DNA of 63,656 bases, filler included, from Lenisia limosa (Eukaryota; Protista; Breviatea): assembly GCA_001655205.1 (NCBI GenBank). It is 5 parts of 5 records of this genome, joined end to end, with 100 filler letters (N's around TTAATTAATTAA, not from the genome) between each part and the next. Parts side by side here need not be neighbours in the genome. Positions count along the whole stretch, not along the records: positions 31,362 to 39,830 come from LPNZ01011062.1; 4 more parts are not named here. One strand, given 5' to 3'. Of the stretch, positions 33,060 to 36,340 are shown in pieces. Numbering within the stretch: position 1 is the stretch's first letter; the number at the start of each line of letters is the position of its first letter. The position numbers and the translations under genes were made by a program. The notes under the pieces were generated by a model. That model was given only the letters and a program-made list of their open reading frames with translations, was not told where the DNA came from and did no database searches.

Positions 33060-36000
33060 AGCAGAAATAGCGGATTACATGAGGAAACAAATAGAAAGTA
33101 GTGTAAATCACTCCCATACCTACTCTGATGGTTCTTTAAACTGCTAAAGGGGTTCTTGCTTTCCAGGTTAAGGAGGGCTAGTGGGATGAGACAACTATGT
33201 TCATGGGATTCAAACGATTCAGAATTGAATTTTGTACTTAATTTAGTTTTAAAAAAACAGAAATATAGAAAAAATAGGGAAAACGCTCCCATGCCTACTC
33301 TGATGATTCTTTAAACTGCTAAAGGGGGTTCTTGCTTTCCAGGTTAAGGAAGGCTAGAGGGATGAGACAACTATGTTCATGGGATTCAAACGATTCAGAA
33401 AATTTTGTACCTTCGCATACCTTCACATAAATTGCGAGAATTGCATAGAAATAAGACAGCNNNNNNNNNNNNNNNNNNNNNNNNNNNNNNNNNNNNNNNN
33501 NNNNNNNNNNNNNNNNNNNNNNNNNNNNNNNNNNNNNNNNNNNNNNNNNNNNNNNNNNNNNNNNNNNNNNNNNNNNNNNNNNNNNNNNNNTTCAAAATAT
33601 TAAAATCTTGTCCTGTAAAGGCTGACTATATTATATAATATACTCAATATCCTTTTATTACTTTTACGTCTTTAGGTTAAGAATTCACTTCATCACAGTG
33701 CATCTTCTATTATCCAAATCGATGCTGACATGCGGAGAAGCCTTACTGAGCAGGGCAACACTGTATGTTCAATGTTTATCTGGTGTTTCTAGTAATACGA
33801 ATTTTTGCAGCCTGGACTCAATTTTTGTGGAAAAGGAGACCAGCAATCTTGTTTTCTGGGAATAATATGTTTTTGCACTCGTGTGTCTTCGACTATCCAT
33901 TGAATTTAATACATAGCCGCCTCCATGATTTGATGAGTTAGTCTTTTATTCTTCTTGTTATTACACACGGATATTCTAACTTACTTCTATGTGAAACTGT
34001 GGTAAGGTGACACGTAATTGAGTGTGAAGAGGACAGAAAGAGGACAGGCTGTGATTTACTTTAGACTTATAATCTTGCATTATTCAAAGACAGAATCAAA
34101 GATTTGTTGCAAAACAATAATGATTTCAAAGATGAAAATGAGCCCGAATGGGGGAAGGATGTAATGAAAACCTATTCAGGAGTATGGATGGTGGTGGTTT
34201 TTTCGAAGTGTTTTCATCGATGGGAATAACTTTTCAGATTGGTCAACTTCCTTTAGATATTCTTCAAGAGTTCTGTACTTTATTAGTAAGTGTCAAAGTT
34301 GAGGTTTAATATTTTAGGCTCGTAGTGTTTTGAAAAAAAATCAAAACGACCAAGACAAATTTTTATCAGCTGTCTATGACATTGAAAATGCGGTTAAAGA
34401 CAACTATGAACAATCGTTCAAGGTTTTCAAAAAAGATGAAGATGACGAACTTTTAGTTTGTTTCTTTATGATCAACTTAACCTTTTAGAAACTTGTAATT
34501 GACCCCTCTCTGGTAAAACCTTCTTGAATTAATTTTTTTTAGAAAACGGAAATAGTTAATCATTTTTCAAAACCTCCAAATAGTTCTGGTAGTACTACAA
34601 TTTATGTAAGAATTTCATCTTTATTATAATCCTCTCAGGTTGAATTCGAAGGTAAAACAGACGACAAAGACAAAATTGCAACCGAATTTAATAAGCTTTG
34701 TGATGCTTACAAAAGAGGAAATGCAGTGACAGTTGTCGGTTCTGGAATGAGCATTGCCCAGAGTTGGGATGCCAAGAAGAATGCAAAGGGACAAAAGGCA
34801 ATTATTGGATTTCCAGTAAGCTTTTAGATGAAACTAAAGTCAAATTTTGCATCGTTGACTTGTTTTTTAATGATTTATTTCTGATTTCTTTTTGTAGACC
34901 TGGGATCAAATGATTGATAGCTATTTTCCAGAGAGCAGTAAACCAAGACCAAAACACCCCCTTCCTTATGGCAACAGGTAAAGTAACACTATTTAATATC
35001 TTTCAGCAACCGAGTTATGCTCCAATTTGCAATTAAGGAGTCAAGTGACAAGGTGGTGAACTTGATATTGACATATTAATGCACATTTAGAATCTTAACC
35101 AGAAAGCAATGAAAAGTTGTTTCTGACTCCTCTTTTTGAAAATGAGAAGGACGATTGTCTTTGCTCTTGGACAATTGACGAAAACTGCTATATGAAAGCT
35201 TATGAGTCTGGTGGCAAGTGTGAATCCTCTTTACCATTTTAGGAATTTCCAAAAGTCCGACTTTCCAGATGTGTTCAATCAGCTTGCAACCACCAACTAC
35301 GATCCTATCCTTGGCATCGTATGTTTCCTATTTCCTAGTATTTGTCCTTTAATTAGGGCTTCACTTTGGTTCGAAAAAAGTCTGAATTTTTTGATAAATT
35401 CTCGAAAACTATCGATATTTTACCGGTCTTTTTCTAACTGAAGTCAAGCCCTACCTTGAGTATATCAAAATTCTAACTTAAGTAAACCTTTGATGCTGCA
35501 GAACGTATATGCGATGGAAATGAACAAGAAGACTAACGAAGTTACCTTGAAGAATGCCAAGGTGATTTTTCTCACGGTAAAATGTTTACTATTTAGACTC
35601 GTATGATTTCCTACCACGACCAAACTAAAAAGGAAGAAGTGAGTTTGCTAATATCTAGGGCTCCATGCAATTAATTTTTTGAGGAAATAAATTGACAAAA
35701 TTAGAAATTAACCTGTCTGGAATAGGGTTCTTGTTATAATATGTCCGACAATAATTTACCATTAATTATTTTCCCAAAACAGGAGAGATAGAATTTGTTT
35801 TCAAGGGTTTACGCGGTGATCAGACTTGGAACGAATAAGAAAACCCATTGGTTATGAGACACTATTTTCAATGTTTATGAATTAGTTTCTTTCAGTTATC
35901 TTTGTCCTGGGCAATTACGTTTCTGGGATTTGACTCTTTTAGATTGCGGAGTTTTGGAAAGGAAAAAGCAAAAGTGTAAGTACAAGTTTTTAGGTTGAAT

Positions 36001-36340
36001 CGTTCGTCTTTGTTGACCTCCACAGGTACTTCATACATGGATGGGTGTTTGACCCTGACAAGTGCGTTGTAACCAGTGAAGACTACCAGAATGTTGGTGA
36101 TGGGTTGTCCGCGTTCACACTCTATTAAACGCTAATCTCCGTTTTGTCTATTAGGTCATATCGTTCTTTGGATATTTGACGCTTTCATTATCCAAATTGT
36201 ATTCCTCTAAATTATTTTAGATTCTAAAGCATAACCAGGAGGATGCATTTATTGGTGCAGCAATTCAGTAATCGGGGAACTAATAAATATGACAAAGTGT
36301 TCGCTCTTTTAACTGAGGAGATTGACTCTCCTATCACATT
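33060..36340 (+). CDS. SIR2_2-family (non-canonical sirtuin / NADase-like, FAM118-like) protein with an uncharacterised N-terminal region; ends approximate
   Basis: Exons: KLCDAYKRGNAVTVVGSGMSIAQ..GFP | TWDQMI (G.G.S...sW..L motif), QLATTNYDPILGI (TTNYD), KAKV|YFIHGWVFDPDKCVVTSEDYQNV (HG...T..DY), then an SFFGY-like segment. One internal exon junction near 35100-35200 could not be phased. Confidence 0.68.
33111..33410 (+). repeat. Tandem duplication of a ~125-bp intron+exon unit (33111-33237 and 33286-33410)
   Basis: Both copies contain acceptor ctttccag| and read LRRASGMRQLCSWDSNDSELNF / LRKARGMRQLCSWDSNDSENF followed by a GT donor. Confidence 0.8.
33944..34032 (+). repeat. ~90-bp dispersed repeat, copy 2 (intron of SIR2_2 gene)
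   Basis: Matches 3901-3988 on a different scaffold. Confidence 0.85.
35354..35453. mobile_element. MITE family 1 (100 bp, hAT-like), copy a
   Basis: TIRs TAGGGCTTCACTTTGGTTCGAAAAAAG...CTTTTTCTAACTGAAGTCAAGCCCTA; flanking 8-mers cctttaat/ccttgagt. Confidence 0.85.

What the first reader, a model, noticed from the sequence alone, without database searches (positions are those of the whole stretch)
33060..36340. Intron-rich SIR2_2-type (antiphage-like / FAM118-like) sirtuin with an unknown N-terminal domain in a fast-evolving locus
Seen: motifs VVGSGMS...TWDQMI, ATTNYD and YFIHGW....VVTSEDYQNV are those of the SIR2_2 family, not of canonical deacylases such as the GTSL-type gene at 13374-15167, and no Zn-binding CxxC pairs are evident. 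More than 150 aa of unassigned sequence precede the domain. The scaffold is AT-rich and full of duplications, a MITE and dispersed repeats. Known: SIR2_2 domains are the NADase effectors of bacterial defence systems (Thoeris ThsA, DSR, SIR2-HerA, short pAgo partners), and animal FAM118 proteins belong to the same family. Inference: a candidate protist innate-immune or cell-death NADase whose N-terminal region is a sensor or oligomerisation module.
Basis: partly seen in the sequence, partly recalled or inferred. Interest (0 to 1): 0.78.

Follow-up and report, generated by a model that had tools for sequence, protein, structure and literature searches.

The report
Spliced SIR2_2 NADase-type gene, frame broken
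This is a real, transcribed, very intron-rich eukaryotic gene of the SIR2_2 (antiphage-like, NAD-cleaving sirtuin) family, a kind already known from about a fifth of eukaryote genomes, but the only messenger RNA seen for it loses the reading frame before the catalytic histidine.

Summary
A profile built from 45 Pfam-verified bacterial SIR2_2 proteins was scanned over all 540 six-frame peptides of the piece. It ranks the four motif exons first to fourth (GSGMS, TTNYD, IHGW..DY, FIGCG..D). All lie on the + strand and are colinear with the profile. The chain scores 29.0 bits; the best of 200 shuffles scores 10.7.

A 702-nt poly(A) RNA contig confirms ten GT-AG junctions. The assembly gap lies upstream of every supported exon.

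On this mRNA the frame of the TTNYD exons does not continue into the HG exon. It hits TGA at 36050-36052. The DNA run agrees with the window there. An alternative acceptor at 35896 would restore one ORF, but the 47 added bases look like intron.

I favour a recently disabled copy or a non-productive isoform over an intact gene. The N-terminal 107-151+ residues match nothing. The immune role is inference only. Verdict: a new member of a known kind. The joined protein model was not searched.

The parts
33461..33590 (.). Assembly gap, upstream of all supported exons. The 5' end of the gene may be hidden in or beyond it.
   Evidence: stops in all three + frames between 33591 and 33675.
33676..33762 (+). 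Candidate 5' exon (phase 0 to 0, in-frame ATG at 33730). Prediction only.
   Evidence: Splice-site and ORF enumeration. No RNA cover.
34065..34181 (+). Candidate exon (in-frame ATG at 34164). Prediction only.
34238..34285 (+). N-terminal exon. Its 3' end and its junction to 34318 are RNA-confirmed (32-nt intron).
   Evidence: the loose letters CTTTATTA before 34318 equal the exon end.
34318..34455 (+). N-terminal exon of 46 codons, RNA-confirmed. No family match.
   Evidence: 166-nt RNA contig. Searches give no match.
34489..34605 (+). Two small predicted exons (34489-34512, 34543-34605) separated by 30-33-nt introns, all phase 0.
34639..34815 (+). Exon with the start of the SIR2_2 domain and the GSGMS NAD-binding loop (34732-34752).
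   Evidence: profile positions 11-36, 9.9 bits; the nearest named Atlas clusters are DUF4917, SIR2_2 and AbiH (leads only). No RNA cover.
34898..34977 (+). TWDQMI exon. The donor is either 34938 or 34978; unresolved.
   Evidence: No RNA cover.
35099..35205 (+). RNA-covered exon between the GSGMS and TTNYD blocks. Its true 5' boundary is open: in-frame acceptors give exon starts at 35103 or 35107, and TAA at 35096-98 lies in frame upstream.
   Evidence: The spacing test favours inclusion of this exon.
35243..35318 (+). TTNYD exon (catalytic Asn/Asp block), RNA-confirmed on both sides. The upstream intron is 37 nt.
35354..35453 (.). 100-nt MITE with 25-nt terminal inverted repeats, lying in an intron.
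   Evidence: DNA word depth about 78,000 against about 36 baseline.
35502..35638 (+). Two RNA-confirmed exons (35502-35561, 35597-35638). Each is open only in the frame of the TTNYD exon.
35896..35942 (+). 47 nt that would become coding if the upstream acceptor at 35896 were used. This is the smallest change that gives one continuous ORF. It is not seen in the RNA, and its composition is intron-like.
35943..35975 (+). 33-nt exon as used in the RNA contig. With it, the upstream frame and the HG frame are out of register.
   Evidence: (record arithmetic and depth bins).
36026..36092 (+). HG exon (catalytic His, then VVTSEDYQN). In the frame coming from upstream it reads TGA at 36050-36052.
   Evidence: Pfam SIR2_2 E 0.1. 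Local HMM 12.2 bits.
36221..36267 (+). RNA-confirmed exon that links the HG block to the FIG block.
   Evidence: (47 nt by record arithmetic and depth bin).
36679..36759 (+). Exon with the FIFIGCGPDGLGD block.
   Evidence: profile positions 199-241.
36891..37763 (+). Last three RNA-confirmed exons (36891-36963, 37571-37627, 37695-37760) and stop TGA 37761-37763.

Best explanation
This is a genuine nuclear gene of a eukaryote with micro-introns. It has at least 18 GT-AG introns, six of them only 30-37 nt long.

It encodes a SIR2_2 (SIRim) type sirtuin domain: a GSGMS loop, TTNYD with the catalytic Asn, IHGW with the catalytic His, and FIGCG..D. There is no Zn module and no C-terminal partner domain. 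The domain follows about 107-151+ residues that match nothing.

The gene is transcribed and polyadenylated. As sequenced, and as spliced in the only mRNA seen, the frame is lost between the TTNYD exons and the HG exon. That mRNA would give a product ending at TGA 36050-36052, without the catalytic histidine.

Most likely this copy has recently been disabled by a one-base length change somewhere in 35606-35975. Alternatively, the transcript seen is a non-productive splice form.

Shown: family-type motifs in order, splicing, the frame break, and agreement of DNA and RNA. Inferred: that an intact version would cleave NAD+ on activation or oligomerisation, like ThsA, DSR2 and FAM118B, and any immune role.
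For: - Family: top-4 colinear profile hits. Chain 29.0 bits against a shuffle maximum of 10.7. Pfam SIR2_2 is the only hit of the HG exon. Block spacings fall within the family range.
- The profile itself finds ThsA, KomC, DSR2 and FAM118B in the PDB.
- Splicing: a 702-nt RNA contig with zero mismatches lies on 11 exons whose lengths add up exactly to the record coordinates.
- Break: frame 0 stops in the HG exon. Only the +1 frame reads the HG, FIG and C-terminal exons, 150 codons open across six junctions.
- The DNA run shows no variant in 35597-35975.
- The 47 nt that would rescue the frame score as intron: LLR -2.7 bits, where exon windows average +2.7. The rescue would also give a TTNYD-to-HG spacing of 74, above the maximum of 69 in 53 bacterial members.
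Against: - Apart from this one break, the ORF is clean over about 19 exons and all catalytic residues are kept. Any disabling event would therefore be very young.
- A strong alternative acceptor (tttctttcag) at 35896 restores a single ORF and shares 5 of 6 splice sites with the RNA.
- An acceptor that good and in the right phase occurs upstream of none of 14 other acceptors. Weaker ones occur upstream of 3 of 14.
- RNA evidence is one low-depth assembled contig from one library. Contigs drop minor isoforms.
- The GSGMS and TWDQMI exons have no RNA cover.
Confidence: 0.5

Rival explanations
1. The gene is intact and functional. The productive mRNA uses the acceptor at 35896 (an 80-nt exon instead of 33 nt) and gives one ORF of roughly 480 residues. 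The assembled contig is an unproductive isoform, possibly a way to keep a dangerous NADase low.
For:: this is the smallest frame-restoring change, with 5 of 6 sites shared with the RNA; the acceptor has the best pyrimidine tract of all alternatives; all other exons are in phase and the catalytic motifs are intact.
Against: The isoform is not seen in RNA (the record arithmetic excludes an 80-nt exon). The added 47 nt are T-rich and intron-like and would encode a very hydrophobic insert. The resulting spacing lies outside the bacterial range.
Confidence: 0.33
2. The frame break is an artefact: an error shared by the assembly and the RNA contig, or a chimeric RNA contig that mixes isoforms.
For: Both data sets come from one study. 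The RNA contig has one homopolymer difference elsewhere (A9 against A8 near 34332).
Against: The DNA contigs (depth about 36-43) and the RNA contig agree base for base over 35502-36092, with no variant listed. Illumina data rarely miscount short runs. All junctions are canonical.
Confidence: 0.08
3. This is not a SIR2_2 gene. The motifs are chance matches in AT-rich sequence, or the exons belong to two different genes.
For: No exon reaches a curated family threshold alone. The exon-level phmmer search found no relatives.
Against: Four blocks lie in the right order, strand and spacing, at 29 bits against a shuffle maximum of 10.7. One RNA contig joins the TTNYD, HG and FIG exons.
Confidence: 0.03

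Closest known systems
Bacterial SIR2_2 NADase effectors (ThsA of Thoeris, DSR2, KomC, SIR2-HerA, SIR2-APAZ)
   Same: The same four sequence blocks occur in the same order, with similar spacing and without a Zn module. The catalytic Asn (TTNYD) and His (HG) are present.
   Different: This gene is eukaryotic and spliceosomal. It has no SLOG, HerA, Ago or other partner domain. Its extra region is N-terminal and unassigned. The reading frame is broken in the mRNA seen.
Eukaryotic SIRim proteins, clades A-E (bioRxiv 10.1101/2024.09.18.613514)
   Same: Antiphage-type SIR2 domains are encoded in eukaryotic nuclear genomes, in 19% of the genomes surveyed, and are often fused to other domains.
   Different: The fusions described there (NACHT, NB-ARC, TPR) are not seen.
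Vertebrate FAM118A/B (PMC12700824)
   Same: Same SIR2_2 subfamily, no Zn module, Asn and His conserved. PDB FAM118B is found by the same profile that finds these exons.
   Different: The FAM118 clade is defined as vertebrate-specific with >=41% identity. The exon-level search found no such relative. Filament surfaces were not examined.

Membership tests
SIR2_2 (PF13289) / SIRim | Rossmann GxGxS NAD-binding loop at the start of the domain | tested here: met
   GSGMS at 34732-34752 aligns to profile positions 11-36 at 9.9 bits, rank 2 of 540 peptides.
SIR2_2 (PF13289) / SIRim | TTNYD block with the catalytic Asn | tested here: met
   ATTNYD at 35286-35303, profile positions 119-127. The distance from GxGxS is 89 or 101 residues, within the family range of 81-156.
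SIR2_2 (PF13289) / SIRim | HG block (catalytic His) followed by a hydrophobic strand and DY | tested here: met
   IHGWVFDPDKCVVTSEDY. Pfam SIR2_2 is the only family hit (E 0.1, 13.1 bits). Local profile 12.2 bits, E 0.002.
SIR2_2 (PF13289) / SIRim | Hydrophobic-FxGxS/G..D block about 41 residues after the His | tested here: met
   FIFIGCGPDGLGD at 36686-36724, profile positions 199-241. The spacing is 39 against a median of 41.
SIR2_2 (PF13289) / SIRim | Whole protein above Pfam's gathering score (24.5 bits) | tested here: inconclusive
   Only exon-by-exon scans were possible, and the best reached 13.1 bits. The joined model was not searched. The local-profile colinear chain scores 29.0 bits.
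SIR2_2 (PF13289) / SIRim | One continuous ORF through the domain | tested here: not met
   On the RNA-confirmed splice path, the frame of the TTNYD exons ends at TGA 36050-36052.
SIR2_2 (PF13289) / SIRim | NAD+ cleavage activity | not testable with these tools
   Needs a recombinant-protein assay.
Canonical sirtuins (SIR2, PF02146) | Zn-binding module with two CxxC pairs | tested here: not met
   There is no CxxC pair in any exon translation. No exon hit PF02146.
FAM118 clade | >=41% identity to human FAM118A/B; vertebrate-specific (PMC12700824) | tested here: inconclusive
   phmmer of the 59-aa GSGMS exon against 1.84 billion representatives gave only two spurious repeat proteins. An exon this short is borderline for detecting 41% identity.
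Thoeris ThsA | C-terminal SLOG (or Macro) sensor domain | tested here: not met
   The ORF stops 88 residues after the FIFIGCGPDGLGD block. The C-terminal exons have no family hit.

The most novel reading that the evidence does not exclude
This would be a lineage-specific eukaryotic SIRim NADase with a new N-terminal sensor or assembly domain. Its production would be gated at the RNA level: the default 3' splice site (35943) yields a harmless truncated message, and only a switch to the upstream site (35896) yields the active enzyme.
Probability: 0.07. Interest if true: 0.65.

Novelty: new member of a known kind. Interest (0 to 1): 0.3.

Why it matters
Antiphage-type sirtuins in eukaryotes are a current topic, through FAM118B/SIRanc and the five SIRim clades. 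A member with an unrecognised N-terminal region from a micro-intron organism adds one data point to that distribution. It does not open a new question by itself. The practical lesson concerns annotation. Motif-level reading also missed that the only transcript is out of frame, so it should not be counted as a functional immune gene without cDNA evidence.

Tried and rejected
Searches that gave nothing useful:
- Exon-by-exon scans of Pfam, NCBIfam and PADLOC. The only hits were on the HG exon: SIR2_2 at E 0.1 and PADLOC candidate PDC-S25 at E 0.001.
- PDB phmmer with three exons: nothing.
- ESM Atlas: weak leads for the GSGMS exon, none for the N-terminal exon.
- Word search and metagenome loci: blank.
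- Full phmmer of the GSGMS exon: two spurious repeat proteins.
- The look-up of encoding contigs with two genomic ORFs, to learn the source: not on record.
- Rfam: none.

Exon candidates rejected by the RNA:
- HIVLWIFDAFIIQI (36155-36196).
- The acceptor at 35994 (VESFVFVDLHR...).
- A direct 34977-to-35243 join. It is in frame, but it gives a GxGxS-to-TTNYD spacing of 68, below the family minimum of 81.

Other readings considered and dropped:
- A ciliate-type genetic code or +1 ribosomal frameshifting. The offending stops are TGA, the gene also ends in TGA, and there is no AAA-TAA/TAG site.

Not settled or not done:
- The organism could not be identified. Run names are coded, so 'protist' is neither supported nor refuted.
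- The joined spliced protein has no reference. It was therefore not sent to any search or fold tool, and no structure prediction or phylogeny was made.

Full report
**Gap first.** The piece (31362-39830, GC 38%) has gaps at 32161-32262, 32612-32621, 33461-33590 and 39358-39500. Left of gap 33461-33590 lies a 176-nt tandem repeat (33105-33224 / 33280-33400, 92-96% alike) with no coding signal. Right of it, all three + frames contain stops before the first candidate exon at 33676. No supported reading frame crosses the gap, so the core of the finding does not depend on it. The 5' end of the gene may lie in or beyond the gap and is unknown.

**Observation.**
- VVGSGMS 34732-34752
- TWDQMI 34898-34915
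- ATTNYD 35286-35303
- YFIHGW 36027-36044
- VVTSEDYQN 36066-36092

**Family test.** Exon-by-exon scans of the curated libraries are weak, as expected for pieces of 20-59 residues. The HG exon hits only Pfam SIR2_2 (E 0.1-0.17, 12-13 bits) and a PADLOC candidate family. To get a usable test I did the following:
1. I fetched bacterial loci with a degenerate TTNYDxLLE DNA pattern.
2. I extracted the ORFs and aligned 45 of them (A1).
3. All 45 proved to be Pfam SIR2_2.
4. A profile of A1 finds ThsA, KomC, DSR2, SIR2-HerA-type proteins and human FAM118B among solved structures.

I then scanned that profile, without filters, over all 540 stop-to-stop peptides of the six frames of the piece. The four best peptides are exactly the four motif exons. 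All are on the + strand, in the same order as the profile: positions 11-36, 119-127, 165-187 and 199-241. The best colinear chain scores 29.0 bits. Two hundred shuffles of the piece give mean 1.7, sd 1.7 and maximum 10.7.

Block spacings also fit 53 bacterial members:
- GxGxS to TTNYD is 89 or 101 residues (family 81-156).
- HG to FIG is 39 residues (median 41).

No CxxC pairs occur. The SIR2_2 assignment is therefore well supported. One caveat: my profile sequences were chosen for carrying the TTNYD, GxGxS and HG motifs.

**Gene structure.** One RNA run (poly(A), same study as the DNA) holds two contigs on the locus.

The 702-nt contig lies, with zero mismatches, on these exons:
- 35099-35205
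- 35243-35318
- 35502-35561
- 35597-35638
- 35943-35975
- 36026-36092
- 36221-36267
- 36679-36759
- 36891-36963
- 37571-37627
- 37695-37753

Pieces too short to be listed were recovered from the record arithmetic and the depth bins. The exon lengths add up exactly to the record coordinates, and every junction is GT-AG.

The 166-nt contig confirms exon 34318-34455, its donor, and the junction from 34285.

The RNA also bridges the introns in which the DNA contigs break at repeats, so the order of the exons is independently confirmed. The ORF ends at TGA 37761-37763.

Upstream exons are predictions: 33676-33762, 34065-34181, 34238-34285, 34489-34512, 34543-34605, 34639-34815 and 34898-34977. They form a chain that is phase 0 throughout, linked by introns of 30-56 nt. 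Six introns are 30-37 nt long. The longer ones carry repeats.

**Frame break.** On the RNA-confirmed path, the frame that reads TTNYD and the next three exons runs into TGA at 36050-36052 inside the HG exon. The HG, FIG and C-terminal exons are read only in the +1 frame, which is open for 150 codons across six junctions. The exons 35502-35561 and 35597-35638 are open only in the upstream frame. The shift must therefore lie between 35606 and 35975. The DNA run shows no variant there.

I enumerated all GT-AG paths. The smallest change that gives one ORF is an alternative acceptor at 35896 instead of 35943.

For this rescue:
- Its pyrimidine tract is the best of all alternatives.
- No equally good in-phase site lies upstream of 14 other acceptors. 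Weaker ones do in 3 of 14.

Against it:
- The RNA record excludes an 80-nt exon.
- The 47 added bases are 47% T and score as intron: -2.7 bits, where exon windows average +2.7.
- The TTNYD-to-HG spacing would become 74, above the 23-69 range of the bacterial sample. On the RNA path it would be 58.

I put a recently disabled copy or a non-productive message at about 0.5. An intact gene with an unseen productive isoform is about 0.33, and an artefact about 0.08.

**A second open point.** The RNA contig starts at 35099. That is 4-8 nt upstream of the two acceptors (exon starts at 35103 and 35107) that would join in frame to donors at 34938 or 34978. TAA at 35096-98 lies in frame just upstream. 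The exons carrying GSGMS and TWDQMI have no RNA cover at all. This junction needs cDNA.

**N-terminal region.** Depending on the start (ATG at 33730 or 34164, or further upstream), 107-151 or more residues precede the domain. No exon of it matches any family, structure sequence or Atlas cluster. Its function is unknown. 'Sensor or oligomerisation module' is a guess.

**Mechanism and comparison.** By homology, an intact product would bind NAD+ in the Rossmann cleft and cleave it using the Asn of TTNYD and the His of HG. ThsA, DSR2 and FAM118B do this, typically only after oligomerisation (PMC12700824). This is inferred, not shown.

Eukaryotic SIR2_2/SIRim genes are known from 19% of surveyed eukaryote genomes, in five clades (bioRxiv 10.1101/2024.09.18.613514). 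The kind is therefore not new. Membership in the vertebrate FAM118 clade is not supported.

**Relatives.** I could not assign a clade. The full phmmer search with the longest exon found no true relative, and the word search and the metagenome scan were blank. These results only exclude close relatives of that one exon.

**Limits.** The joined spliced protein has no reference. Joined translations were used only inside scripts, to check frames. The organism remains unidentified.

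Noticed in passing
window 35354-35453: A 100-nt element with 25-nt terminal inverted repeats and TA on both sides, lying in an intron. DNA word depth is about 78,000 against about 36 baseline, so it is a Stowaway-like MITE with thousands of copies.
   Followed up: partly
window 36374-36416 and 37089-37131: A 43-nt repeat (93% alike) sits in two different introns of the gene. 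The flanking stretch 36975-37256 has DNA depth up to about 10,000, which points to another dispersed repeat family.
   Followed up: no
window 34286-34317, 34456-34488, 34513-34542, 34606-34638, 35206-35242, 35562-35596: Six micro-introns of 30-37 nt. Three are RNA-confirmed, and 34456-34488 only at its donor. They sit beside longer introns that carry repeats. The size class may help to place the unidentified organism.
   Followed up: partly
window ~34325-34332: The RNA contig has nine A where the DNA (depth 36, no variant) has eight, inside a coding exon. This could be slippage, an error or an allele. It would shift the frame if real.
   Followed up: no
window 32336-32611 / 32688-32963 and 33105-33224 / 33280-33400: A 276-nt direct duplicate (99% alike, 352 nt apart) and a 176-nt tandem repeat, both directly upstream of the gene and the gap.
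   Followed up: no
window 38339-39218, minus strand: Exon-like open stretches of a neighbouring gene on the opposite strand, with higher GC. There are no Pfam hits exon by exon. A coding-like ATG/AAG trinucleotide tract lies at 38942-39067.
   Followed up: partly
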